From contig NIVC01000158.1 in NCBI GenBank assembly GCA_002269645.1, positions 620,001 to 684,000 of the forward strand: a DNA stretch of 64,000 bases. The letters are read 5' to 3'. Both the position numbers and the translations under genes were made by a program. The stretch comes from Macrostomum lignano. Taxonomy: Eukaryota. Shown here piece after piece: positions 803 through 61,826 of this stretch; position 1 is the first letter of the stretch, and each line of letters starts with the position of its first letter. The notes under the pieces were generated by a model. It saw nothing but the letters and a program-made list of their open reading frames with translations. It had not been told where the DNA came from and searched no databases.

Positions 803-3575
<2,773 letters not shown>

Positions 3576-4353: not shown

Positions 4354-4354
4354 T

Positions 4355-4369
4355 TGGCGACGAAGATGG
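4355..4369 (+). promoter_or_regulatory. Primer-binding site TGGCGACGAAGATGG, tRNA-Ser-like
   Basis: Directly follows the 5' LTR. Matches the complement of the metazoan tRNA-Ser(GCU) 3' end as I recall it (TGGCGACGAGGATGG) at 14/15. Confidence 0.75.
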
Positions 4370-7300
4370 CAGACCTCAGTCTCAACCCACCAACGCCGTA
4401 CCTGGCTAGCCCGGGCGAGCCAAGCTGCCCGTGGCCAAGGTGGAAAAGTCAGTTCGCGATCTATTCAACAGCAACGGAACTGGACAAAACGTCGGAGGCG
4501 AGACAAATGGCCGTCCTTCGACACTGCCTCGGGCCGGAAGGCCAACGGCAGGCGGAAAGCGTGGAGGCGAACGACATGAAGAAGCTGCTCGAAGAACTGG
4601 ACAAAATTTTCGTGCCGAACAAGAGCGTCATCGGAGCTCGCTACAGGTTTCGGTGCAGGGAGCAGCGACCAGGGGAGCCGGTGCAGCAGTTCGTCAGAGA
4701 TCTGCAGCAGCTCGCGGCCGATTGCGCGTTCAAGGACCTGACGAAGGAGATGGTCCGCGATCAGCTTATCGAGAAAACGTGCATGCCACGTATCCGTGAG
4801 AGACTGCTGATGGAACCAGACGACCTGACACTGGAGAAGTCCCTGCAGCTTGCCAACCAAATCGAGACAGCCATCAACGAAGCCAAGGTCCTCAACGGCA
4901 CATCAGGGGCGTCTCAAAAGACTGTGCACGCCGTCTCAAAGCAGAAAGTCAGAGCCAAGCCCAAAACGCGCAAGGACAGCGAGAAGTGCAGGCGATGCGG
5001 CGGCGACTACAGCAAGGAGCACAAGTGCCCAGCAATGGGAAAAAAGTGCAACAACTGTAATAAGCCGAACCACTTTGCCGCTGTATGCCGAAGCAAGACG
5101 GTGGCAACAGTCGGCGAGGAGGTGAGCACCATCCTGCAAGTCGCGAACCAGGATCCGACTGCCGTCCACAACATCGAATGCGCGGTCCGCGACGAGCTGC
5201 TGACGCTGACGCTGGACAGCGGTGCCTCCGTGTCGGTGATCAGCATGTCCGACTTCCAGAGAGTTCGACGACACGCAACCAAGGGAAGCGGAACTCCAGC
5301 ACGGCTCGTGGCCTACGGCGGCTCGCACATCAGGACCTACGGGACAGCGACGCTCCCGATCACGTTCAAGGACAAGACGGCCTCAGTCTGTTTTCAAGTC
5401 GCAGAGGGCAGTTCAAGCCTTCTTGGGCGCTCCGACTTCCCGAAGTTTGGCGTGTCGCTTCAAATCAACCATCTCGGTGACGAGGGCTCAAAACCCCAGG
5501 ACAGCTTCAAGGACCTCTTCGGGCCAATCAGGCGAGCCAAGGGCATCGTGCACCGACCGAAGTTGAAACTGGATGCCCACCCGGTGATCCAGGCTCGCCG
5601 CAAGATCCCTCTCGCCATGAAGGAGGCGGTAAAAGCGGAACTTGACCGAATGGAGGCGGAGAAAATCATCGAGAAGATCAGCGCCAGTGCCTGGGTGAGC
5701 AACATGGTCATCGCCCCCAAGAGCGACGGTAGAATCCGACTCTGCATCGACCTACGAGACGTCAACAAGGCGATCGTCGCGGACGCCTACCCGACACCGA
5801 CTATCGATGAGTTGGCGGCCGAGTTCCGTGGATCACAAGTCTTCTCGAAGCTGGACATGAAGACAGGGTACCTCCAGTTCGAACTTCACCACGACAGTCG
5901 ATACCTAACAGCTTTTATCACGGACGAAGGCCTGTACCAGTTCTGCCGCGTCCCGTTCGGCCTCAGCAGCGCGGCAGGGTTCTTCCAGAAGGCCATGGCT
6001 CGCATCCTGCAAGGCCTGCCAGGAACGGTCAACGCAGTCGATGACATCCTGGTGCACGGCAAGACAAAGAAGGAGCACGACGACAACCTGAGCCGGACAC
6101 TAGAACGTCTTCGAGAGAACAACATCGTGCTCAACGATAAGTGCGTCTTCGCCCAACCGGCAGTGGACTTCCATGGTTTCCGCATTTCCGGCAACGGCAT
6201 CCAAGCGATCGACTCGTACGTGAAGGCAATCAAGGAGACGTCTCAGCCGAGTAACACCAAGGAGGCAGCTGCATTCCTCGGAGCGACAAACTTCTACAGC
6301 CGGTTCGTCCATGCCTACTCGGAAACCACGGAGCCGATCCGCCGGCTGCTACGCAAAGATGAGCCGTGGTCGTGGGGTCCAGAGCAAGATGGCGCTTTCC
6401 AGAAAATCAAGAGGCAGCTGACCATGGCGCCAGTCCTAAAGGCATTTGACCCCAAATCCGAGACAATCATCCGATGCGACGCCAGTGCCCACGGCATCGG
6501 CGCCGTGCTGGCACAGATACAGCTCGGCGAGGAGCACCCGATTGCCTACAGCTCGCGGTCCCTCACTTCACCGGAGCGGAACTACTCGGTCGGGGAGAAG
6601 GAGGCGCTGGCTGTCGTATGGGCGGTCGAGAAGTGGCACCTGTTCACCTATGGCCGGCCAGTGACCGTCTACACAGACCATAGCACGCTGAGCACTCTGC
6701 TGACCGCGGGCAGTCAAGGAGTCCGGCCGCTGCGCATCCTTCGGTGGACAGAGCGTCTTAGGGCATACCCCCTGGTGACCATTCGCTACGTGCGCGGCCG
6801 AGACAACACTATCGCCGACCTGCTGTCTAGGCAACAACCAAACGTCCAGGAGGATCCGCAGAGCAACACGGACGACCAGGAGATCGGCCGAATCCTGATG
6901 GCGCAGCTGGCTCCAGCAGTCAACCTGGACGAGGTGCGCCAAGAAACGGCCAGCGACAAAGTCCTGCAAGCGGTTTCTCGCTTCATCAAGGAGGGGTGGC
7001 CGGCGTCCAAACAACTGGCACCGGAGCTGCAGGCCTACTACCGCGCAAAGGACGAACTCTACCTGTTCGGCGACGGCTGCGTGGCTCGTGGCCAGGCTAC
7101 CGTCATCCCAGCTACACTGCAGAACCGGGTTCTCAATATGGCGCACGAAGGCCACCACGGAATTGTGCGGACCAAGCAGCGGTGCCGATCTGCAGCTTGG
7201 TGGCCCGGTATCGACAAGGACATCGAGTCGGCGGTGAAGGACTGTACGGCCTGCGCGCTGGCTGGCAAGGCGTCTCGACCAAGCGTTCCGCCCATGACGA

Positions 7301-8249
7301 TCACCAGCACGCCAGCAGGAGCCTCGAGCAACTCGATATCTGCGGAGAGTTCAGAGCGGCGCCGCGTCACCAGCGATTCGCGATCGTGCTCATCGATCAG
7401 TTTAGCCGATGGCCAGAAGTCGCGCTCGTAGAATCGGTCACAACCAAGGTAGTCGTCGACTTCCTCGAGGTCATCTGGTCGAGGTGGGGCATCCCGAAAA
7501 GCATCACAACCGACAATGGACCCCAGTTCGGCCGCGAGTTCGACGAGTACCTGGCGAGCCTGGCGATCGAACACAAGCGAACGGCAGTGTACTGTCCAGA
7601 ACAAAACGGCAACGTCGAGCGATTCAACCGCACTCTCGGCGAGGGCGTGACAGCGCACTTGGTCGCCGGGTGGAGCTTCTGCAAGGCCGTCCGAGCTGTC
7701 GTCGCGGCCTATAGGGCGACCCCAACGCACGTCACGGGTTCGAGTCCACACGAGCTCATGACTGGCCGACCAATGCGCACCCCGCTGCTCGCACTCCAAC
7801 CGGACTCGGAAGCCAAGCGGCCGACGTCGGCTCATGACCGGGTCGCCACGGCAAAGCAGCGAGCAAAGAGCGACACCGACCGTCGGCGGCATGCATCGGC
7901 GACGCGGACCGCGGTCATCCAAGACGGCTCCTGGGTGCACATCTCCAAGCCGGTGGCACCTGGCAAGCTGGAGCCGAAGCTCGCCGGGCCGTTCCGGGTT
8001 CGCAAGCGATTCAAGACAACTGTGCTGCTCGAAAACGGCAAGCGGTGGCACCTGCGGCGCTGCGTGCCGGCCGGACCGGGCAAAGGCAGCGACGACGACG
8101 GCGACGCGCAGCTCGACGAAGGTGGCGGCGGCCCGGAGGTGGATCCGCCAGGACCGCCTGATGATCTCGCTGGGGAACCGCCGGCACCCCTGCCGGTGCT
8201 GAGAAGGTCAGAGCGCGAGCGTCGCCCGCCAATGCGCTACCCGAACTGA
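4366..8249 (+). CDS. Gag-Pol polyprotein of the LTR element, interrupted by a -1 frameshift near 7320-7330 inside integrase
   Basis: Gag knuckle CNNCNKPNHFAAVC; protease LDSGASVS; RT ..LCIDLRDVNK..NAVDDILV; RNase H CDASAHGIGAVL; IN HHCC (HEGHHG..CTAC). The IN core (LDICG..LIDQFSRWPE..DNGPQF..NGNVERFNR) continues in the ORF ending at 8249. Confidence 0.93.
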
Positions 8250-10014: not shown

Positions 10015-11114
10015 GGACTTCTTCAAGTTTATGTTGATAAAATACTTCCGATTTTTCAATTTTTCTGAAACTTGCGGTGGAGACTTATGGGGCACCCAAA
10101 ATTACAAAAATGCAAAAAAAAGTGTAGAAAGTTACCTGTACGGTTGATGCAATGACGATTTACTTGATTCCCTATTCTCTTAATGAGGTTCGGTGAAAAA
10201 AGTTTCTACAAATACATTTTTGAAAGTGTATCCACTTGACTTTTAATTTTATGGCACATGTGCTAGAACTTCATTAGGCCAATTAAAGATGAATATTAAT
10301 ATCTACAAATTAATATGCAAATGTTTTTTTTGTTTGCGGATTATAGTTTTTCAATTTAGTTATAATGCATTGACAGTGCCACGTCACTGTGTGCCTTTTT
10401 TTAAAAACTGCCACGTCACAATCCGCTCAATCTTTGCACTTGCACTTTCACTGCACCCAGCCAAAGCAACGTTCAAAACTCGCACTTGTATTTCGCACCT
10501 CAAAACCAACTACTGTACAAGGCTAGATTACTAATTCAATTGTATTAAGGCAGTAACAGCACTTAATTTCGGTAAGCAAATTCATTTCGATAAAGTTATG
10601 TTGATTCAAGTTTATGTTGATATAATTAAACAGAGATTCATTGTCAAATAAATTCCAACTTGTTTCAACCCCCCCCCCTATTAGAATTGGAATTTATCAA
10701 CACAATCTTGAATAGGTCTCTATGCCTCTATTCAAGTTTATGTTGATAAAATCAATCCCCATGAAGAATCTCCCCACCCTAAAAACCCCATTCCCTATGC
10801 CCCGGTGGTTGGTTTTAAGCTACAACCCCCCCCCCTATTAGAATTGGAATTTATCAGCACAATCTTGAATAGGTCTCTATGCCTCTATTCAAGTTTATGT
10901 TGATAAAATCAATCCCCATGAAGAATCTCCCCACCCTAAAACCCCCCATTCCCCATGCCCCGGTGGTTGGTTTTAAGCTACATATAATTGGGTTAAAGCT
11001 ACCTAAAAATGGAGCTCAAATTTGAAATCAGCACCATCAAAAACCCCTATAGAGACAAAATTATGATCCTATCCAAATTGAAACTATTTTATCAACATAA
11101 ACTTGAAGAAGTCC
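10015..11114. mobile_element. Non-autonomous DNA transposon, 1100 bp, perfect 30-bp TIRs, 8-bp TSD AAAACTTT (Merlin-like)
   Basis: GGACTTCTTCAAGTTTATGTTGATAAAATA at 10015-10044 and its reverse complement at 11085-11114; AAAACTTT at 10007-10014 and 11115-11122; no transposase ORF. Superfamily inferred from GG termini plus 8-bp TSD. Confidence 0.88.
10666..10981. repeat. Internal ~157-bp tandem duplication within the TIR element
   Basis: The block CAACCCCCCCC(C)TATTAGAATTGG...TTTTAAGCTACA occurs twice. Confidence 0.9.
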
Positions 11115-15222: not shown

Positions 15223-16125
15223 ATGGATAACGGCCCGGTGAAGAAGGAGCCAGCTGAATTTTTGCTAACGGCTGCGGCAGCCGCCGCTGCTGCGGCTATG
15301 CGATCCGGCAGCCCACCAAGCAACGGACTGGCCTCAGGTCTAGCAGCAGGGCTACCGTGCTCATCATCATCAGTAACCGTCTCTTCGGCTCATATTAGTT
15401 CGCTGTTTCTGTCCAAAATTAGCGGCGTGCCTTGTCCGGCCACTCCAACTCGCTATACCGCGCCCGTTCACATCGACGTCGGCGGCGTGGCGTACACCTC
15501 CTCGCTGGAGACGCTGACCCGCTATCCTGAATCGCGGCTGGGGAAAATGTTCAACGGATCGGTACCGATAGTACTGGACACGCTAAAGCAGCACTATTTT
15601 ATCGACCGGGACGGGGAGTTGTTTCGCCATGTGCTTAATTACCTGCGCTCAGGACGGGTGACTACGCCACATGACTTCCAGGAGCTTGATCAGCTCATTG
15701 AAGAAGTGAAGTTCTACGAGCTGTCTGGGATGCTACGACAGTTGGAACAATTGCGACGAAGTGCAAGGCCGCAGCAGCAGTCGCAGCTGAACTGGCAACG
15801 GCAGCAGCGGGACTGCGAGTGTGTCACGCTGACCGTGCGACCGGAACTACAGGAGAGAATTCTGATCACCGGTCGGAAGCACCTGCTAGCCGAGCTGTTC
15901 CCGGATGTTACAGACTCCCTGATGGAGCCGCGCAACGCAAGTTGGAATCAGCTTGACTCGGATTACGTAATTCGATTTCCGCTGAACGGTTTCTGTCACC
16001 TCAACTCTGTTCAGGTGCTGCGACTGTTCCTGTCGCACGGTTTTACAGTGGCTGCATCGTCTGGAGGCTGCGCCCCGGACAGCCAACAGTTCACCGAGTA
16101 CCTGCTGTGCAAGTTGCTGGATTGA
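15223..16125 (+). CDS. KCTD15: KCTD1/KCTD15-like BTB/POZ protein, 300 aa, single coding exon
   Basis: BTB APVHIDVGG..YTSSLETLTRYPESRLGKMFNGSVPIVLDTLKQHYFIDRDG and C-terminal domain VIRFPLNGFCHLNSVQVL..QQFTEYLL, both characteristic of KCTD1/15. AATAAA follows near 16300. Confidence 0.92.
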   Translation: MDNGPVKKEPAEFLLTAAAAAAAAAMRSGSPPSNGLASGLAAGLPCSSSSVTVSSAHISSLFLSKISGVPCPATPTRYTAPVHIDVGGVAYTSSLETLTRYPESRLGKMFNGSVPIVLDTLKQHYFIDRDGELFRHVLNYLRSGRVTTPHDFQELDQLIEEVKFYELSGMLRQLEQLRRSARPQQQSQLNWQRQQRDCECVTLTVRPELQERILITGRKHLLAELFPDVTDSLMEPRNASWNQLDSDYVIRFPLNGFCHLNSVQVLRLFLSHGFTVAASSGGCAPDSQQFTEYLLCKLLD

Positions 16126-16987: not shown

Positions 16988-19920
16988 TCAGCCGAACATG
17001 TTGTACAGAAGGCGCGACCTGCTAGTAAAGTACGACCCAGCCAATTGGTCGGTTTCCCCACCAGCGTTGTCGCCAGTCCGTAGCGGAGCCGCATCCTGTG
17101 CATAGTCCTGCATGATGAGGCCAGTCGCGAACCAGAATCCTTCCGGAGGCTGGGCCGCTTCCAGAGTGATCCAGTTGATGCCCTAGACGGTGGTAGGGAC
17201 AGGGATAGTGCTTAGGACAGTGCCACAAATCAAGGTTGGCTGATTTGACCTCCGAGCACGCAGAATACGTACACAGACACACGCTCGCACAGGGTGTAAA
17301 GCGGTCGAATTTCTCGTCAACTGAAATGTGCTCTTTCTGTGCCTTGGGATTGGCCCTCGTTGGCGAAAGTTTCGCGAGCCCCAGTCCAATTTTTGTGCAC
17401 ATGGGTATCTTACCTTACCTGGGTGTACTTTAGCACGAAATTTAGCCGTGTTAATTGCTGAGCTACGACTGATTCTGCCCCCCCCCCCAGTTGCTGATTT
17501 GGTGGCTCTCTCAACTTCCATAGATTTGCAAAACTTGAATTCGCTCTCACCTCATCCCTTTTAATTAAATTTCCTGATCCCATACAAGAAACCATTTTAA
17601 ACCCGCTATTTATTCCAAAGTTTTATGAGCGAAAAAAATCCTACAGCAAAATAAACATGTCGCATCATCTGCTGATAATCGGAAAACTTGAACTGGTGGT
17701 GATCCGACTTGGCATTGATAGTCGCTGGCTTGCCTTGGTCCATACTGGATGCAGGCAACTGCGTTGGGTTCGCTGGCGGCGCTGTCGGTGGCTTTTTTTG
17801 GTTTTGCTCCTTTGCAGAGGATAAATTGCTAGCCGATTGATTGTGGCCAGCATCGAATACGCACCCCGTATGCTCAGATACAGACACAGAGCTGTTGCTG
17901 GCTGCTGTAAAAAGGCCTTGCCATAGAGTGCTGCTACTGCTGCTTTGCGGCTTCTTGTCGGTGCTGGTATTCGTCTCTACCCGGGATTCCTCATCGCTCA
18001 AGTCGACCCATTGTTGTTGCGCGGACATCGTTGGTGATGACTCAGGTGGCAAAGGCTTCGATTTTTGATCGAATGATGAATTCTTCGTGGAAGGGAAAAC
18101 TTTCGGCGTTGCATTCAGCGATTCAATAGAAGTCTGACGCTTCGAACGATGTACTTTAGGGAGTTCTGGCACTGATGCTGAACGTGACACCAGTTTTGGT
18201 TCAGCATTTTTATTCTGAGACGGCTCCAACGCAGCATCGGATGAAGACTTTCCCAGAACTGATTTGTACGACACTCCCATGCAATTTAAGTTGGAAAGTT
18301 TCACCGACTGGGACGGCTCGGAGAGTAGTTGAGACCCTTGGCTTTGCAACTCTTTTTGGCGCTGCATATTTTGGTGCTTTTTCTTGCTGGTCAAATCGAT
18401 CACGATGCTGGGGTTGCTGGAGTCGCTCTTAGTTCCCGTCGTTTCCGTGTTTTGTGGGGTGCTGGAGGTGCACAGAGATATATGCGATTGTCGCATTGGC
18501 CAATCGATATCTTCGTCGAAATCCTCGTCAATGTCATCGTAGGCATCGTCTGAATACTGTAACTGACTTGGGCCTGTCGAAGAACCCAGCGCACTCTGTT
18601 TCTGCGGAGGAAAATGACTGATCTGTTATCATCTCAAAAAACAGTTCATGGACTACTAAAAGAGCGTGCAGAAATTTACGCTCGCATAATTAATAGCAAC
18701 TTTTAAAGCTTCCTCTACCTTTGGAATACGACTCCATGAGTAGCGAAGATCAGCTTCAATCCATGTGCACTGAAGAGTATCCAGGATGCGGCGCATCGAA
18801 TCCTTATTAATAACTTTGCCTTTGATGTGACGAACTAGCGAACCGAAGTCGTTGCAATTGCATAGCTTCGGTTCCATGCACTCAGCTGTTAGTCGGCACT
18901 TAGGACAAACTCCACTGAAGACGTCTCTGCGTCTATCATCCAGGGATGTAGAGCGCATATGGGAGACACTAAAGTGTCGCAAATTGTCGCAGTGTAAAAC
19001 GCCTAATAAAGCTGCGTACCGCAATACATCAAGCTGGTACGACATTTCGCCAATGGTTTCGAACAGCAACGTGTCTAGATCAGTAACCTGCGGCCTGCCG
19101 TAGTGATCCAACGCTATGCTTGTTAGCGACAGATTTCCGTGATATATTCTCCTGTGGTGCAAAAATTCCAAGGCCAGCAGGATGCAGGCAGCGTAGTAGC
19201 GAACTGTGCTGTGCGTGAGATGCACCATTAACTTCTTGAGATCGCTTAAGTACATGTTACTGGGCAGCGGCGTAATGACCAGCAGATCGTGGCGGTATAC
19301 CTTAGCTGCTAAAACTTTCTGCACAAACGGCGTCAACGAGGCCAAGTCTCTCTGAGCTTTGATAATCCGTTTAAAGTTCTCCAATATTGTTTTGATCTCC
19401 TCTTCTTGCCAGTCGCGTAATGATCGACTAGTGCACATGTACCGGACGCAGTGGCTGTCGCAGCGGATGTGTCTTTGATTTGGAATAAGATAAGGCAGAC
19501 GTTCAGTAAAATACTAAAGCATTATGAATATGGTAGGCTCGTTAACAAGATAGAATAATTTTTCCCTAGTATACACTGTGCTATTTCAATGGATCAGATG
19601 TTTAGGTGTTGAGTTGGTTGGAACAGAATGCCAACTTACCTGCTTCCATTTTGCACGCAGCGCCTTTGGTCGAGCCAGAAATCTCGAGTCAAGTGGCTGA
19701 GATCGAAATCACCGTCGAATAGAATTATTTGGCTTTCTTTGGGGGCACTCTGACCGGCGTTCGCTTCTTCCTCTTTGGGGACATCAGCGTTTGCTTTCAA
19801 GTCGTTGGCTTTATTGCCTTTCTTTGCTCCTGTCTTCTTTTTTTGTACATTTTTCTTCGAGTCGGTCGTGTTTTCACCAGGCGTGTTTTCACGGTGATAT
19901 GATAATGAAGTTGTTTGCAT
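16988..19920 (-). CDS. AGC-derived pseudokinase, about 741 aa. Exons 19920-19640, 19472-18680, 18601-17645, 17182-16988.
   Basis: Kinase-fold segment TVRYYAACILLALEFLHHRRIYHGNLSLTSIAL..QVTDLD (HRD to HGN, DFG to DLD). The exon 3/4 junction reads MMRHVYFA-GINWITLEAAQPP, like the AGC tail HPFFxGIDWxxL..PP. All four exons join with GT-AG in phase. The links of exons 3 and 4 are inferred. Confidence 0.72.
17270..17400 (-). mobile_element. SINE-like family 2 fragment (intronic)
   Basis: Shares the ..ACACCCTGTGCGAGCGTG 3' end and central motifs with the other copies. Confidence 0.5.
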
Positions 19921-24375: not shown

Positions 24376-29525
<5,150 letters not shown>

Positions 29526-54710: not shown

Positions 54711-54947
54711 ACTATTCTCAACTTAGCTGGCTTAACTATACATTTTTGCTTCCTATTTAGTTCGTTGCAAAGAGCCCAGCAAATTTAATATTCACCATAG
54801 ACTAAGAATATAACTTTTCGCTATAAGAATATAACCCATTCTGGCCTCATCATCAGAGCTTCTAGTATGCATACAGAGCTGGTGCCTGCATGTGTTTGAT
54901 TGGGGCTTATCGAAAAATTTGTTGAATTCATTTTGGAGAAATAAGGA

Positions 54948-54994
54948 GACAGACAGACCCTAAGACAGACACTAAGACAGACAGACAGACCCTA

Positions 54995-55035
<41 letters not shown>

Positions 55036-55092
55036 CACAGACAGACAGACAGACAGACACACAGACAGACAGACACACACACACACACACAC

Positions 55093-55161
<69 letters not shown>

Positions 55162-55166
55162 TAGAC

Positions 55167-55230
<64 letters not shown>
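54948..55230. repeat. (GACA)n/(CA)n microsatellite
   Basis: Read directly. Confidence 0.97.
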
Positions 55231-55231
<1 letters not shown>

Positions 55232-55520
55232 TACAAGTGTCTGTGTGTTTAGCTGGACCTCAGAAGTTTTAATGCATTACATGGACCACCGACTTTTTTA
55301 CTTTTAATAGAGCCTTTTTTAAGTTCACGAAAGATCTTCAAAAGTTTGTTTACTTTTGAAGCTGACAGAGGCTCTCATTAGTGGAAATTGCACCAGTATT
55401 TTTATTACTTAAACTGGACCGGTTTATATGGACACCGACAGAACGTGTTTTAGGTGAACCTTCACACCGATTCAAAATCATAGACCAAATTTAGCGTAAA
55501 CCTAACACTGACAGCTAAGG

Positions 55521-58500
55521 TTAAACACAGACCGAGGCAATTGGAAATAATCGATTTAACGTAAAGGAAACAATTTTAAAGAAACACAAAACATTGAATT
55601 TTTTTTGCCGGATTCGTTGATCCTGCTTCTCGGATTCTCGAAGGCCGTATAAATCCGGATTAGTAAAATAGTCGAACACTTGTAGATTTTCAGAAAAAAT
55701 TGGTCCACCCCGACGGCTTGCATCCCCAATAACAACTGCTGTTCCAGACAGGATTTTGCCGTGATTTAATGCAAATGATCCTGCCGCATTAGCTGAGTCG
55801 GCTTGAATAGCAATATAGCCGCGGTCACGTAAATAGTCTCGAACCTCTAGTAGACTGATATTTGGAATTCCAAGGAGCCTTGTTTCTGCAACATCGTCAT
55901 CGGCAGAGCAAAAGCCAGAATATGCACTGGCTGCGGTAGCCATTTTTTGCATCGCACATCCCCGTGGCAACTGCACTGTTGTCGATATGTTCGAAATGGA
56001 CATTTCCGAACAGTTCGCAGGTGTTGAAATTGAGACGACGAAGTCCACCTATGAAATTAATTAAATTACATAAAATACTTTGTATAACGTTCAGTAAAAT
56101 GCAATCAAATTGTTCTATCATTAGGATTAAGAAGCGTTAAAAGATACGCTCGAATACGCTCACTTAAATTGATACCAACAATAGAACTAAAAAACAACTT
56201 AACGTTTACTACCAAAACTAACTTCGACAACAACAAATACTAAAGTCGCTTACCTGATTTGAAAAAAACGAAGCAATAGTGCCACCAAAATACTTCACGC
56301 CTTCTTCACATAGCCGATCACGGTTAAAAGCCTTTGAATATGCGAAAAAAACTTTTTGTCTTGAAACCAATTCGTTGAAAACTCGTTTCTGCTGTCGACT
56401 GCCTAAAATGTAAGTACCACTAAAAACATACAAAGCAAAACAAAAGGGAAACATTCTTATACTATTCACAGGCACTACATTTCAATTTATTTTAAAGAGA
56501 TAATCAGAACTGGCGGAATATCGGACCTTAAGAGAGTCTGAGAATGAGAGCTTATAAGCTGGACCCCAGATCAGGGCACCATCTTACACTGACTGCGTCT
56601 GTCTGTTGGTGTCACGGTGTGTTAGCTGGACCCCAGATCAGGGCACCATCTTACACTGACTGCGTCTGTCTGTTGGTGTCACGGTGTGTTAGCTGGACCC
56701 CAGATCAGGGCACCATCTTACACTGACTGCGTCTGTCTGTTGGTGTCACGGTGTGTTAGCTGGACCAAAGATCAGGGCACCATCTTACACTGACTGCGTC
56801 TGTCTGTTGGTGTCACGGTGTGTTAGCTGGACCCCAGATCAGGGCACCATCTTACACTGACTGCGTCTGTCTGTTGGTGTCACGGTGTGTTAGCTGGACC
56901 CCAGATCAGGGCACCATCTTAAACTGACTGCGTCTGTCTGTTGGTGTCACGGTGTGTTAGCTGGACCACAGATCAGGGCACCATCTTACACTGACTGCGT
57001 CTGTCTGTTGTGTCACGGTGTGTTAGCTGGACCCCAGATCGGGCCACCATCTTAAACTGACTGCGTCTGTCTGTTGGTGTCACGGTGTGTTAGCTGGACC
57101 CCAGATCAGGGCACCATCTTACACTGACTGCGTCTGTCTGTTGGTGTCACGGTGTGTTAGCTGGACCCCAGATCGGGCCACCATCTTAAACTGACTGCGT
57201 CTGTCTGTTGGTGTCACGGTGTGTTAGCTGGACCCCAGATCGGGCCACCATCTTAAACTGACTGCGTGTGTCCGTTGGTGTCACGGTGTGTTAGCTGGAC
57301 CCCAGATCAGGGCACCATCTTACACTGACTGCGTCTGTCTGTTGGTGTCACGGTGTGTTAGCTGGACCCCAGATCGGGCCACCATCTTAAACTGACTGCG
57401 TCTGTCTGTTGGTGTCACGGTGTGTTAGCTGGACCCCAGATCGGGCCACCATCTTAAACTGACTGCTTCTGTCTGTTGGTGTCACGGTGTGTTAGCTGGA
57501 CCCCAGATCGGGCCACCATCTTAAACTGACTGCGTCTGTCTGTTGGTGTCACGGTGTGTTAGCTGGACCTTAGATAAGGGCAAAATCTAAGACTGTCTTC
57601 TTTAAATTCAAACACTATTAGGAGGAATAATTGTGCGAGTTGCAGTGCAGTTATGAACAAAGGCGTAAAAGTGCAACGCAACAAAGTACTTACAGCAGAA
57701 GAGTTGCCTTTAGCAGTGGCTTGATGAGAGGAGCCAGCTTCACACGAGTCAGCACTTCCACATCGGGACTGCTTGCTTCCTTTCCTCTTGACCTATCTGG
57801 ACTTGTTTCGAGCTCTCTTGGCCGATTCGTGCTGCTCTGGAGAAAAACTGGCCGAGTCTTGATGCTGCTTCTGCTGAATGGCCGAGTCTTGATGCTGCTT
57901 CTGCTGACTGGTCGAGCGACGTTGCTTCTTTGACTTATTGGCCGAGTTCTGCTGCAGCTGAGGAGAGTGACTGGCCGAGTTTTGATGCGGCTTCTGCTGA
58001 CTGGCCGAGTCTTGATGCGGCTTCTGCTGACTGGCCGAGTCTTGATGCGGCTTCTGCTGACTGGCCGAGTTTTGATGCGGCTTCTGCTGACTGGCCGTGT
58101 CTTGATGCGGCTGAGGAGACTGAGTGGCCGGGTTCTGTTGCTGCTTCTGCTGACTGGCCGTGTCTTGTTGCAGCTGAGAAGACTGACTGGTTGAGTCTTG
58201 CTGCTTGGTGTGTATATTAAAAATTCCTTCCGTTAAAACGAAAGCTCTTATTGCGAACTAATATTTTGTAAGTTGGCTAGACTTTTTGTGTCTGTCTCTA
58301 GTTGTCAGTCTCACGTCATGGTGTGTTAGCTGGACCCCAGATCGGGCCACCATCTTAAACTGACTGCGTCTGTCCGTTGGTGTCACGGTGTGTTAGCTGG
58401 ACCCCAGATCGGGGCACCATCTTAAACTGACTGCGTCTGTCTGTTGGTGTCACGGTGTGTTAGCTGGACCCCAGATCAGGGCACCATCTTAAACTGACTG

Positions 58501-59508
58501 CGTCTGTCTGTTGGTGTCACGGTGTGTTAGCTGGACCACAGATCAGGGCACCATCTTACACTGACTGCGTCTGTCTGTTGGTGTCACGGTGTGTTAGCTG
58601 GACCCCAGATCAGGGCACCATCTTAAACTGACTGCGTCTGTCTGTTGGTGTCACGGTGTGTTAGCTGGACCCCAGGTCGGGGCACCATCTTAAACTGACT
58701 GCGTCTGTCTGTTGGTGTCACGGTGTGTTAGCTGGACCCCAGATCAGGGCACCATCTTAAACTGACTGCGTCTGTCTGTTGGTGTCACGGTGTGTTAGCT
58801 GGACCCCAGATCGGGGCACCATCTTAAACTGACTGCGTCTGTCTGTTGGTGTCACGGTGTGTTAGCTGGACCCCAGATCAGGGCACCATCTTACACTGAC
58901 TGCGTCTGTCTGTTGGTGTCACGGTGTGTTAGCTGGACCCTAATCAATTACTGTTTGTTTACTTTGAAGCACGAGTATGAAGCTAATCATTTTGTAGCTG
59001 TATAGGAATTTCGAATCAAAGAAAAACATAAAGGAGAATTGTGTCCACAATATTTGTTCATAGTTTAAGTAAAGCGCAAAAACCAGAAATTTTAATAACA
59101 CGTTACAACAAAACTTACTGACTTGTCCTTAGCTTTTGTTCCAGGGAAGCACTTGCCTGAAATGTATAAAATAATGTAATACTGTATAAGTTGTTGATGC
59201 AAATGTGCTATTGTTTGCTATTGATATTGACTGTAGAGTATAGCTTACCGCACTCAGAGTGCAGAGCCTTTAGGATGTTCTCGGGGATATTTTTTTTCGG
59301 CTCCCATGTGTTTTTACTCCTACAAAGCATGTTAAAAATGAAAAGCAGTAAAGCCTTAATTTTTTTACAAGTTAAGTAAAATATTATTTAGAATTAGAAG
59401 TAATTCTTTTTGAAAATTTTCTTACCTGGGATAGCCAGTCCACTTTATAAAAAACTTCTTTTTGCAGCACTTCTCAATCCTTTCGAAGTAAAATATTTTG
59501 GCCGTTTT
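55521..59508 (-). CDS. DBF4: Chromodomain + basic 10-aa repeat + Dbf4/ASK/Chiffon motifs N (BRCT-like) and M. Exons 59508-59426, 59319-59249, 59156-59119, 58226-57694, 56419-56254, 56048-55521. 5' end and true 3' end unresolved.
   Basis: Chromodomain: IFYFERIEKCCKKKFFIKWTGYP-RSKNTWEPKKNI. Dbf4-like: QKVFFAY..VKYFGGTIASFFSNQ-VDFVVS; TVQLPRGCAMQKMA; LLGIPNISLLEVRDYL; LSGTAVVIGDASRRGGPIFSE. These match human DBF4 as recalled (KVFYL..LGGRVEEFLSKDISYLIS; TVCLSRGKLLVEKA; WGVKILHIDDIRYYI; LKKPFVKVEDMSQLYRPFY). Splice phases are consistent across all six exons. Confidence 0.68.
56556..57569. repeat. 67-bp minisatellite, array 1 (about 15 copies), intronic
   Basis: GTGTGTTAGCTGGACCCCAGATCAGGGCACCATCTTACACTGACTGCGTCTGTCTGTTGGTGTCACG. 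Confidence 0.96.
58318..58940. repeat. 67-bp minisatellite, array 2 (about 9 copies), same unit and orientation as array 1
   Basis: Read directly. Confidence 0.96.
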
Positions 59509-60789
59509 CTACAGGATATTCTTCCTATATACTTGCAGTTGCAATTGCAACGGGGCCTAAACAAACTCTGGTCTTAGTAAGTCTGGGTTTAAATGGACCT
59601 GATTGCGAGGCTTCTATAGGCAAGCAACCCCACCCAATTTCGTTAGACCTTTTCCTATTGGTTAGCGAGATTCTGTGGCTGGCAAATGTACAGTGCCCAT
59701 TGAGATACCCCACTGGTTGGCCAGTGTCTATTCACACTGTACAGTCTTGAAACAGAAAATTCTAGAATTCTTATCTCCCGACATCAGCTGTTTTAATAAA
59801 AAGCAAACAACTAGTGTACATTGCTGTGTACAATGAGACAAGCAGTCATGCTAAAATAAGGGGGTAGAGATTAGTCTGTGCTACAGGACATCGTTTTAGG
59901 GGAACCACTGGAGGCCGCTATCTTTCAAGGAGTGTGAGGCTCCTTTAAGCATAAGAGCGGCTCACAGTCCAATCACACGATGTACTCCGGATTTTCCGTC
60001 CAATGAATTTGGTTAAAAGGCACTTAAATGTTCGGATAAGCTACGACTTTCAAAGATAGCGATACAAATATGGCTTTCGTTTTGGCTTTGACATAATAAG
60101 ATACAGGTATATAGCTCGTACGAAACAGCCTGTTATCAATCATTACTTCATAGTGTGTGATTGTGTAAATACATCATTCCCTGCAGCACAGGTGGCCAGT
60201 TGCATCACTTACAATTGCGATCTTAGAAGAATTTTTAGTAGCTCAAGGTGGAGAGGAGACTCAATGCTGTGATGCAATATCGTGATTTTTTAAAAAAATT
60301 GTCTTGAAATTAATAGCATATAATAGTTCCGTCTTTGTCGTCCAAGCCCCAAATCCATTATACATATTGTTGCTTACAAATTTGTTATTTTATCGCAAAA
60401 AACAACGTTTTCACGATTACAACAAATCGACAAATTCAGCTACCAATTTACCTAACAGACACAAAACAGACACCAAACAGACAGTTTTTGAAAATGGGTC
60501 ATGTGAAATTTCGATTTACGTGGACCTCGAAAATCGGTTTAGGTGGACCGAGTGAAAGGTCCAGGTAAACTGAAACCGTTGTAACTTGGAACCAAAAGAA
60601 CTTCGAGTGAGCAACTTTAGGGACCACGATCGCTTTCTGCTAGACTCCATCATAGGTCTATGTAAAACATCTTTAACCTTTCATGTAGAAATATATATGG
60701 TGGTCCACGTAAGGGGTCCAGTTAAAACGGGTGGTCCATGTAAGGAGGGAAAAATACTGACGAAAGGTCCAACTAAACACACAGACATT

Positions 60790-61543
<754 letters not shown>

Positions 61544-61826
61544 ACGCAAGTCAATGCAAGAGTACGCGAACTAGCTTAGAGAAGTAGAGAAGTGCTTAAC
61601 AAGATACCGCAAAAAAGTGTCAATCAACACAGTCTCTTTGCTTAAACACATTGTCAATAAATACTTAGTACGAATCGATAGATTAAGCAAATATATGACA
61701 GAGAACTATACCGGAGTCTTCGAAGTTGGCAAATGAGTCAACAATGACAGACAGGTTCTCCAGTGAGTTCATTGCTGATCTCTGAAATTCCTACAAGGAA
61801 TGTAAAGTTCCTTGCTATCTTTGCAG

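What the first reader, a model, noticed from the sequence alone, without database searches (positions are those of the whole stretch)
55521..59508. Candidate chromodomain-Dbf4 fusion gene hidden from the ORF track
Three tiny exons (83, 71 and 38 nt) splice into a chromodomain with its aromatic positions kept (F/Y..IKWTGYP..NTWEP..NI). A 533-nt basic repeat exon follows, then exons with four ordered Dbf4 signatures: the motif N strands, the xRG insert motif, the GIPxI..EVRDYL BRCT end and motif M with exact spacing. Every junction is GT-AG and in phase. I know of no Dbf4/ASK/Chiffon with an N-terminal chromodomain. Such a protein could tether Cdc7 (DDK) directly to methyl-lysine chromatin, a link that fission yeast makes in trans through Swi6-Dfp1 binding. 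The single-transcript connection is inferred from phase only.
Basis: partly seen in the sequence, partly recalled or inferred. Interest (0 to 1): 0.86.

Follow-up and report, generated by a model that had tools for sequence, protein, structure and literature searches.

The report
Chromodomain exons upstream of truncated Dbf4 copy
A flatworm (Macrostomum) locus holds real chromodomain exons followed on the same strand by a real but zinc-finger-less copy of the replication-kinase activator Dbf4; whether they make one working fusion protein is possible but unproven, and the locus may be decaying.

Summary
On the minus strand, six GT-AG exons (59508-55521) join in phase into a 465-codon ORF. Exons 1-3 encode a chromodomain (Pfam Chromo E=7.6e-9; best solved relatives SUV39H1 and HP1). 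Exons 5-6 get no direct Pfam or PDB hit. An exhaustive HMMER search finds three relatives, all Macrostomum lignano (E=1.6e-15 to 9e-10). Two of them carry the DBF zinc finger just after the aligned region. The intron of the canonical M. lignano Dbf4 gene sits at the same codon boundary (FFSKQ|VDC against FFSNQ|VDF). So exons 5-6 are a genuine, old, divergent third Dbf4 paralogue with motifs N and M.

Motif C, the zinc finger, is absent from the whole window. No exon has an in-frame ATG; only the AUG at the end of the flatworm spliced leader could start the ORF. The linking exon is a 30-nt repeat with a weak AAG acceptor. A better CAG acceptor gives another frame, which stops at 57795. The only closely related database model uses that other frame, skips exon 5 and is frameshifted in exon 6. 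No protein on record contains these exons.

The domains are real. The fusion is plausible but unproven. A canonical role as a Cdc7 activator is unlikely.

The parts
59509..59511 (-). TAG directly upstream of exon 1. It is an in-frame stop, and its AG (59510-59509) is the candidate 3' splice or SL trans-splice acceptor (cctgtAG|AAAACG).
   Evidence: The M. lignano spliced leader ends in ...TTGCATG (PMC8629364). Spliced onto 59508 it reads ATG|AAA ACG GCC, in frame with the chromodomain (inference).
59426..59508 (-). Exon 1 (83 nt): KTAKIFYFERIEKCCKKKFFIKWTGYP(R), chromodomain strands 1-3. Donor GTAAGA.
59249..59319 (-). Exon 2 (71 nt): (R)SKNTWEPKKNIPENILKALHSECG, the rest of the chromodomain. 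Acceptor tttgTAG, donor GTAAGC.
59119..59156 (-). Exon 3 (38 nt): KCFPGTKAKDKS. Acceptor atttCAG, donor GTAAGT. It ends in phase 0.
58315..58940 (-). 67-bp satellite array (9.3 copies) inside intron 3.
57694..58226 (-). Exon 4 (533 nt), the linker built on a 30/33-nt tandem repeat. The alternative CAG acceptor (exon start 58200) gives the Q-rich frame (QQKPHQDSAS...). That is the frame used by the sister-copy model P0001, and in this window it hits TAG at 57795-57793. Donor GTAAGT at 57693.
56557..57582 (-). 67-bp satellite array (15.3 copies, same family and orientation) inside intron 4.
56254..56398 (-). Exon 5 (145 nt; an alternative acceptor lies 4 nt upstream at 56402): RQQKRVFNELVSRQKVFFAYSKAFNRDRLCEEGVKYFGGTIASFFSNQ. 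This is the first half of Dbf4 motif N (BRCT strand 1, helix 1, strands 2-3). It has no in-frame ATG. Donor GTAAGC, phase 0.
   Evidence: The intron position is identical to the canonical M. lignano Dbf4 gene.
55521..56048 (-). Exon 6 (terminal; 175 codons plus TAA at 55523-55521). It holds the rest of motif N: RG at 55964-55959 and GIPNISLLEVRDYL at 55871-55830. Motif M follows (about 55751-55659). After that comes a 30-residue hydrophobic tail with no homology and no zinc finger.
55401..55406 (-). AATAAA, 115 nt downstream of the stop: candidate polyadenylation signal.

Best explanation
The window comes from Macrostomum lignano or a sibling species. The locus holds a lineage-specific third paralogue of Dbf4, the regulatory subunit of the Cdc7 kinase. 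This paralogue keeps the BRCT-type motif N and the Cdc7-binding motif M but has lost the motif C zinc finger. On the same strand, 5' of it, lie three exons for an HP1/SUV39-type chromodomain and a repeat-built linker exon. The most likely reading is one transcription unit, a chimeric gene. Each of the first five exons ends in a consensus GTAAG donor. Exon 5 has no start codon and cannot use the spliced-leader AUG in frame. If the protein is made, the chromodomain would bind methylated histone tails, the BRCT would dock MCM2 and motif M would hold Cdc7. Without motif C it should not be a full kinase activator. It would act as a chromatin-bound adaptor or decoy for DDK rather than a canonical Dbf4. 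Shown: both domain identities, paralogy, the conserved intron, loss of motif C, splice-site quality and phase. Inferred: the single transcript, the SL-AUG start, expression and all biochemistry. The locus may already be sliding towards pseudogenisation, because its sister copy is frameshifted.
For: Chromo passes its Pfam threshold and matches PDB chromodomains. The exon 5+6 product hits three M. lignano proteins at 1.6e-15, 3.9e-15 and 9.3e-10 across the exon junction. Two of them carry zf-DBF at 6.5e-16 and 4.2e-12. The intron sits at the identical codon boundary and phase in the canonical gene, L001 10178|11055. The three paralogue lineages are 30-39% identical to one another and share invariant motif residues, so the window lineage stayed under selection for a long time. 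All five GTAAG sites in the gene span are exon ends and match the species consensus. The SL ends in ATG and is in frame at 59508 (sequence). Exon 5 has no in-frame ATG, and the SL-ATG is out of frame at each of its acceptors (sequence). AATAAA lies 115 nt after the stop. The complete 1.4-kb ORF and all ten splice sites are intact in this copy.
Against: There is no expression evidence of any kind. No protein in 5.8 to 15 billion database sequences contains the chromodomain exons, the exon 5+6 ORF or either linker frame, apart from one model, P0001. P0001, from a sister copy, reads the linker in the other frame, skips exon 5 and carries a frameshift best explained by a 14-nt insertion, inferred from its protein sequence, in exon 6. 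The differences inferred between the window and P0001 in exon 6 are 6 non-synonymous to 3 synonymous in the Dbf4 frame. They amount to roughly 4-6% at nucleotide level. That matches non-coding divergence between canonical Dbf4 homeologues (4.5-10%) rather than their coding exon (2.1%). The linker exon's in-phase acceptor is AAG, while the consensus-type CAG acceptor leads to a stop. Frames stay open in a 30-nt repeat largely by construction. No motif C exists anywhere in 64 kb.
Confidence: 0.4

Rival explanations
1. Decaying relic. The locus is a non-functional, unexpressed duplicate. It would be a Dbf4 paralogue truncated at both ends (no start, no zinc finger), stranded among satellites next to chromodomain exons. 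The in-phase chain is then a leftover or a coincidence.
For: No protein is on record for any copy of this locus family except one model. The sister copy is frameshifted. There is no sign of purifying selection in the small sample of inferred substitutions, and divergence is at the non-coding level. Motif C and the ATG are missing. Satellite arrays fill both introns that flank the linker.
Against: This copy keeps a 465-codon ORF, ten consensus-compatible splice sites and all residues invariant among the paralogues. By my rough estimate that is unlikely (a few per cent or less) if it had drifted neutrally for about 3% divergence. The frameshift can be charged entirely to the sister copy. The substitution sample has n = 9.
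Confidence: 0.3
2. Two genes. A small chromodomain protein is made from exons 1-3 plus the Q-rich reading of the repeat exon entered at the CAG acceptor (58200), ending at TAG 57795-57793, about 199 residues. The Dbf4 exons downstream are a separate, start-less remnant or untranslated 3' sequence.
For: The CAG acceptor at 58203-58201 fits the species consensus better than AAG at 58227. P0001 starts exactly at QDSTSQ, which corresponds to 58200, and uses the Q-rich frame. That path is also in phase with exon 3.
Against: A consensus GTAAGT donor sits 100 nt downstream of that stop, and no AATAAA or ATTAAA follows before the satellite.
Confidence: 0.15
3. A functional chromodomain-Dbf4 fusion recruits catalytically active Cdc7 (DDK) directly to methyl-lysine chromatin.
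For: Everything that supports the single ORF (see the best explanation). An engineered Swi6-chromodomain-Dfp1 tether restores early centromere replication in fission yeast lacking Swi6 (PMC5295031), so the design works in principle.
Against: Motif C is absent, and removing it markedly compromises DDK activity on MCM (PMC8927117). M. lignano already has two zinc-finger-bearing Dbf4 lineages for the canonical role. There is no expression evidence.
Confidence: 0.12

Closest known systems
Macrostomum lignano Dbf4 paralogues: PAA77783.1 / Mlig017237 (P0004, P0006) and A0A1I8HXN8 / A0A1I8FWK5 (P0003, P0005)
   Same: They share the BRCT-like motif N with a long insert containing RG...Q..A, the R.L...RD..R end and motif M (V..D...PI...V.D.F.N), at 32-39% identity. 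The phase-0 intron between FFS.Q and VD is identical. Their models also lack an initiator Met.
   Different: They continue in the same exon into a DBF zinc finger (Pfam PF07535) and a long tail. The window copy ends 30 residues after motif M with no zinc finger. No chromodomain match was found within 10 kb upstream of the P0004 gene.
Canonical Dbf4/ASK/Dfp1/Chiffon (DDK regulatory subunit)
   Same: The order N (BRCT) then M is the same. In the yeast and human structures motif N docks MCM2 and motif M binds Cdc7 (PMC8927117).
   Different: The window copy has no motif C. No Pfam DBF4_BRCT, Dfp1_Him1_M or zf-DBF hit was reported for the window product, and there is no direct sequence match to solved Dbf4 chains. 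The link to Dbf4 is transitive, through the M. lignano paralogues.
Engineered Swi6-chromodomain-Dfp1 tether in fission yeast (Hayashi et al. 2009, as summarised in PMC5295031), and the natural Swi6-Dfp1 interaction (Bailis et al. 2003)
   Same: The logic is the same: a chromodomain brings the Dbf4 subunit to methylated heterochromatin.
   Different: That construct is artificial and carries a complete Dfp1. The natural yeast link is made in trans by HP1/Swi6. Here the link would be in cis, and to a Dbf4 without its zinc finger.
HP1 / SUV39H1 / Polycomb-CBX chromodomains
   Same: There is a Pfam Chromo match, the cage is F/Y..W..Y and the NTWEP motif is present. The best PDB matches are SUV39H1 and Drosophila HP1.
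   Different: The hairpin between strands 1 and 2 is shorter (ERIEKCCKKKFFIKW). No chromoshadow, SET or Pc-box partner domain was found. No database protein shares even three 5-residue words with it.
UniRef A0A1I8HLP1 (P0001), a M. lignano gene model from a sister copy of this locus
   Same: It covers the same repeat exon (the aligned stretch is about 70% identical with repeat-number gaps; the non-repeat tail matches at 29 of 34 positions). It uses the same donor at the end of that exon and the same exon 6 start (21 of 21 identical residues).
   Different: It reads the repeat exon in the Q-rich frame, has a sense codon where the window has TAG, skips exon 5, carries a 3n+2 insertion after ...MSISNI and then runs in the +1 frame. 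Its model contains no chromodomain.

Membership tests
Chromodomain (Pfam PF00385; HP1/Pc/SUV39 type) | Match to the family HMM above the curated threshold | tested here: met
   Exons 1-3 product: 35.8 bits against a cut-off of 25.1, E=7.6e-9. 67 PDB chromodomain sequences match at E<=1, best SUV39H1 1.4e-6.
Chromodomain (Pfam PF00385; HP1/Pc/SUV39 type) | Three aromatic cage positions for methyl-lysine | tested here: met
   My reading of the sequence against the HP1 consensus places F/Y in IFYFERI. The HP1 and SUV39H1 alignments place W in IKW and Y in GYP at the cage columns. This is presence in sequence only.
Chromodomain (Pfam PF00385; HP1/Pc/SUV39 type) | Binding of methylated histone peptides | not testable with these tools
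   Needs a peptide-binding assay.
HP1 proper | C-terminal chromoshadow domain | tested here: not met
   No Pfam hit other than Chromo in exons 1-3, and none in either open frame of exon 4.
Dbf4/ASK/Dfp1 (DDK regulatory subunit) | Motif N: BRCT-like domain | tested here: inconclusive
   No Pfam BRCT or DBF4_BRCT hit on the window product. It is homologous at 1e-15 to M. lignano proteins with a weak BRCT hit (E=8e-4, below the cut-off). The profile of the three lineages best matches the XRCC1 BRCT at E=0.15. The AlphaFold models were too poor to use (pLDDT 34 and 38).
Dbf4/ASK/Dfp1 (DDK regulatory subunit) | Motif M (Cdc7-binding) | tested here: inconclusive
   The block AVVIGDASRRGGPIFSENLQVFDYFTN aligns with invariant V, D, PI, V.D.F.N in both zf-DBF-bearing paralogue lineages, directly upstream of their zinc finger. 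No Pfam Dfp1_Him1_M hit was reported in the window or in the paralogues.
Dbf4/ASK/Dfp1 (DDK regulatory subunit) | Motif C: DBF-type CCHH zinc finger (PF07535) | tested here: not met
   It is present in P0003 and P0004 (6.5e-16, 4.2e-12). It is absent from the window ORF and from all six frames of the 64-kb window: tblastn (the hit at 47.2 kb is a microsatellite artefact), the CxxC...H...H pattern and an HMM of the paralogues' fingers (best E=0.5).
Dbf4/ASK/Dfp1 (DDK regulatory subunit) | Common descent with a bona fide Dbf4 gene (shared gene structure) | tested here: met
   The phase-0 intron lies between Q and V of FFS(K/N)Q|VD in both the window (56254|56048) and the Mlig017237 gene (L001 10178|11055).
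Dbf4/ASK/Dfp1 (DDK regulatory subunit) | Binds and activates Cdc7 | not testable with these tools
   Needs co-expression or a kinase assay. The absence of motif C argues against full activation (PMC8927117).

The most novel reading that the evidence does not exclude
A naturally occurring, expressed chromodomain-Dbf4(N+M) fusion in a regenerating flatworm. It would wire the DDK/MCM docking machinery in cis to methylated histone tails. That makes it a natural counterpart of the engineered Swi6-chromodomain-Dfp1 tether. It would either time replication of heterochromatin or satellites, or, lacking motif C, sequester Cdc7 there as a brake.
Probability: 0.2. Interest if true: 0.8.

Novelty: new variant of a known kind. 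Interest (0 to 1): 0.45.

Why it matters
How replication timing is coupled to heterochromatin is known mainly from fission yeast, where HP1/Swi6 recruits Dfp1-Hsk1 in trans and an artificial chromodomain-Dfp1 fusion can replace that link. A natural in-cis version in an animal would show that evolution found the same solution. It would also give a direct handle on DDK targeting in a stem-cell-rich model organism, using RNAi, ChIP and replication timing. Even the conservative result is useful. M. lignano has at least three Dbf4-like lineages, one of them without the zinc finger and absent from the protein sets searched here. The case also shows that Dbf4 homology can be invisible to Pfam yet recoverable through lineage-specific paralogues and intron positions.

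Tried and rejected
Pfam (E<=10) and NCBIfam on the exon 5+6 product gave no BRCT or Dbf4 hit. A PDB phmmer search with the same product gave nothing at E<=10.

A PDB search with the three-lineage profile gave only the XRCC1 BRCT at E=0.15. AlphaFold2 on the single sequence and on the 3-row alignment gave pLDDT 34 and 38, so I ran no fold search.

The word-indexed search with the chromodomain found no candidates. The same search with P0001 found only P0001 itself.

I looked for a downstream zinc-finger exon. The tblastn hits at 47.19-47.32 kb turned out to be a CxxC-like string at the edge of an (ATCT)n-type microsatellite. The regex and HMM scans of all six frames were negative.

I looked for an upstream ATG-bearing exon between 59.5 and 64 kb. 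There is no convincing ORF. Two extra GTAAG donors (60377, 60212) have no in-frame ATG ahead of them.

The SL-AUG cannot start the Dbf4 exons alone, because it is out of frame at 56419, 56402 and 56398. The upstream in-frame ATG (about 56455) lies in the polypyrimidine tract and gives MFPFCFALYVF..., which I judged to be intron.

I tried to fetch the sister locus and to place the window in an assembly. P0001 and the KCTD ORF are not on record as exact products. The window shares no DNA with the 22-kb canonical Dbf4 locus.

An origin of the chromodomain in a chromovirus integrase is unlikely. It is split by two consensus introns, and no chromodomain hit was reported for the window's own Ty3/gypsy integrase.
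Full report
**What is in the sequence**

The window is eukaryotic and rich in repeats. The finding lies on the minus strand. The exons are 59508-59426 (83 nt), 59319-59249 (71), 59156-59119 (38), 58226-57694 (533), 56398-56254 (145) and 56048-55521 (528, including TAA). All junctions are GT-AG, and the phases fit into a 465-codon ORF.

All five donors read GTAAG. The published M. lignano cis-donor consensus is GT[G/A]AG (PMC8629364). On this strand, outside the satellites, the only GTAAG sites between 59508 and 55236 are these five exon ends. An AATAAA lies 115 nt after the stop. Two arrays of one 67-bp satellite fill the introns on either side of the 533-nt exon, and that exon is itself built on a 30/33-nt tandem repeat.

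**Chromodomain**

The product of exons 1-3 passes Pfam Chromo at 35.8 bits (cut-off 25.1, E=7.6e-9). It matches 67 solved chromodomain sequences, best SUV39H1 (1.4e-6) and Drosophila HP1 (3.4e-6). The W and Y cage positions align in those matches, and I place the first aromatic in IFYFERI by comparison with the HP1 consensus. The NTWEP motif is in place. The hairpin between the first two strands is shorter than usual.

No protein among 5.8 billion shares even three 5-residue words with it. It is therefore a divergent chromodomain that matches no close protein on record.

**Dbf4 part**

Direct tests failed. Pfam at E<=10 gave no BRCT, DBF4_BRCT, Dfp1_Him1_M or zf-DBF hit. NCBIfam gave nothing, and so did the PDB sequence search.

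The exhaustive HMMER search of 1.84 billion representatives found exactly three relatives, at 1.6e-15, 3.9e-15 and 9.3e-10. Each aligns in one stretch across the exon 5/6 junction. All three are Macrostomum lignano proteins.
- Two of them (A0A1I8HXN8, annotated as a 'DBF4-type domain-containing protein', and PAA77783.1/Mlig017237) carry the DBF zinc finger at 6.5e-16 and 4.2e-12, immediately after the aligned region.
- I fetched the Mlig017237 gene (L001). Its single intron lies between FFSKQ and VDCL in phase 0. That is exactly where the window has FFSNQ|VDFV.
- The three lineages are 30-39% identical to one another.

Exons 5-6 are therefore a real, old, divergent Dbf4 paralogue. It must have been kept by selection for most of its history.

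**What is missing**

In Mlig017237, motif M, the zinc finger and the tail lie in one exon. The window ORF instead runs 30 hydrophobic residues past motif M and stops. No zinc finger exists in any frame of the 64-kb window by tblastn, pattern or HMM. The apparent hit at 47.2 kb is a microsatellite edge. Removing motif C markedly compromises DDK activity on MCM in vitro (PMC8927117). This product therefore fails a defining Dbf4 feature and should not be called a canonical Dbf4.

No exon contains an in-frame ATG, and a TAG sits directly before exon 1. The M. lignano spliced leader ends in ...TTGCATG, and about 30% of genes are trans-spliced (PMC8629364). Spliced onto 59508, that AUG is in frame (ATG|AAA ACG...). 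This is my inference, and the acceptor is TAG rather than the preferred YTNCAG. At each possible acceptor of exon 5 the SL-AUG is out of frame. The Dbf4 exons can therefore be translated only if joined to an upstream coding exon.

**Is it one gene?**

For:
- Exons 3 and 4 end in consensus donors that need a downstream partner.
- The whole 1.4-kb ORF and all its splice sites are intact.

Against, or neutral:
- The in-phase acceptor of the linker exon is AAG, whereas a consensus-type CAG acceptor 26 nt downstream (exon start 58200) is also in phase with exon 3. That second path runs in the Q-rich frame and meets TAG at 57795-57793.
- Two of three frames are nearly open in the repeat by construction.
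- With two alternative exon 5 acceptors, two of three phases can be satisfied. 'In phase' is therefore weak evidence; I put it at about a five-fold likelihood ratio.

The only closely related database entry, A0A1I8HLP1 (P0001), is a gene model from a sister copy. It starts exactly at 58200 in the Q-rich frame and has a sense codon where the window has TAG. It splices from the same donor straight to exon 6, skipping exon 5. After 21 identical residues it shifts frame, which I attribute to a 14-nt insertion inferred from its protein sequence. Searching with it returns only itself. So no protein on record contains any part of this locus family other than that model.

**Constraint**

I back-inferred the nucleotide differences between the window and P0001. 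In exon 6 they fall 5:1:3 on codon positions 2:1:3 of the Dbf4 frame, which is 6 non-synonymous to 3 synonymous. The overall level is about 4-6%.

The canonical Dbf4 homeologues give a calibration: 2.1% divergence in the coding exon and 4.5-10% in flanking non-coding DNA. The pair therefore shows no sign of purifying selection. But n = 9, and the frameshifted sister copy may carry all the changes.

Conversely, an intact 465-codon ORF with ten good splice sites would be unlikely after about 3% neutral drift. I estimate a few per cent or less. The functional state of this copy is unresolved.

**Verdict**

The best reading (0.4) is a chimeric transcription unit: chromodomain, repeat linker and Dbf4 motifs N+M without the zinc finger, possibly started by the spliced-leader AUG. 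If the protein is made, it would be a chromatin-bound DDK/MCM adaptor or decoy, not a canonical activator.

The rivals are:
- a decaying, unexpressed relic (0.3);
- two genes, with a chromodomain/Q-rich protein ending at 57795 (0.15);

The nearest functional precedent is the engineered Swi6-chromodomain-Dfp1 tether, which restores early centromere replication in fission yeast (PMC5295031). Public RNA-seq and SL-read mapping would settle the matter.

Noticed in passing
window 56557-57582 and 58315-58940; also 54947-55235 and 60793-61587: Two arrays of the same 67-bp satellite, in the same orientation, fill the introns on either side of the repeat exon. Long (AGAC)n/(ACAG)n microsatellites bracket the whole locus. 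A GGTCCAGCTAA... motif like the satellite's start also abuts the 55.2-kb microsatellite.
   Followed up: partly
window 4354-8249 (+): A Ty3/gypsy-type retroelement. One ORF carries RVT_1, RNase H and Integrase_H2C2. The integrase core (rve) lies in an overlapping ORF in another frame. No chromodomain hit was reported.
   Followed up: partly
window 15223-16125 (+): A single-exon KCTD1/15-like gene (BTB_2 plus KCTD1-15_CTD, E=1.7e-35). Its exact product is not on record in the gene-position collection, so the window may come from another assembly, haplotype or sibling species than GCA_002269645.1.
   Followed up: partly
window 1687-2079 (-), 24376-24741 (-), 18656-19438 (-): Exon-like ORFs with a WW domain (4.4e-15), a Na/Ca-exchanger domain (3.3e-15) and a weak protein-kinase match (4.5e-4).
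   Followed up: no
P0002 (UniRef A0A1I8JFC0) versus P0003: A second M. lignano Dbf4 model is identical to P0003 up to ...KEKRKGR and diverges exactly where the zinc finger begins. The window's homology ends at the same point (...RIRQKK). This could be a recurrent breakpoint or an exon boundary just before motif C.
   Followed up: no
L001 9990-10001; P0003-P0006: All the M. lignano Dbf4-like protein models lack an initiator Met, and P0004 has none in its first roughly 440 residues. A TTGCAG acceptor 9 nt upstream of the annotated P0004 CDS would put the spliced-leader AUG in frame, so these genes may start on the SL AUG.
   Followed up: partly
L001 about 10200-11050 (intron of the canonical Dbf4 gene): This intron also holds a roughly 29-nt tandem repeat array whose copy number differs between homeologues. 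Satellite-filled introns seem usual in this genome.
   Followed up: no
window 28.0-29.6 kb, 45.1-47.1 kb, 49.8-53.0 kb, 62.3-63.3 kb: Kilobase-scale microsatellite and minisatellite tracts produce long spurious ORFs in several frames (SIYL, HSHS, SISI and EERRG repeats).
   Followed up: no
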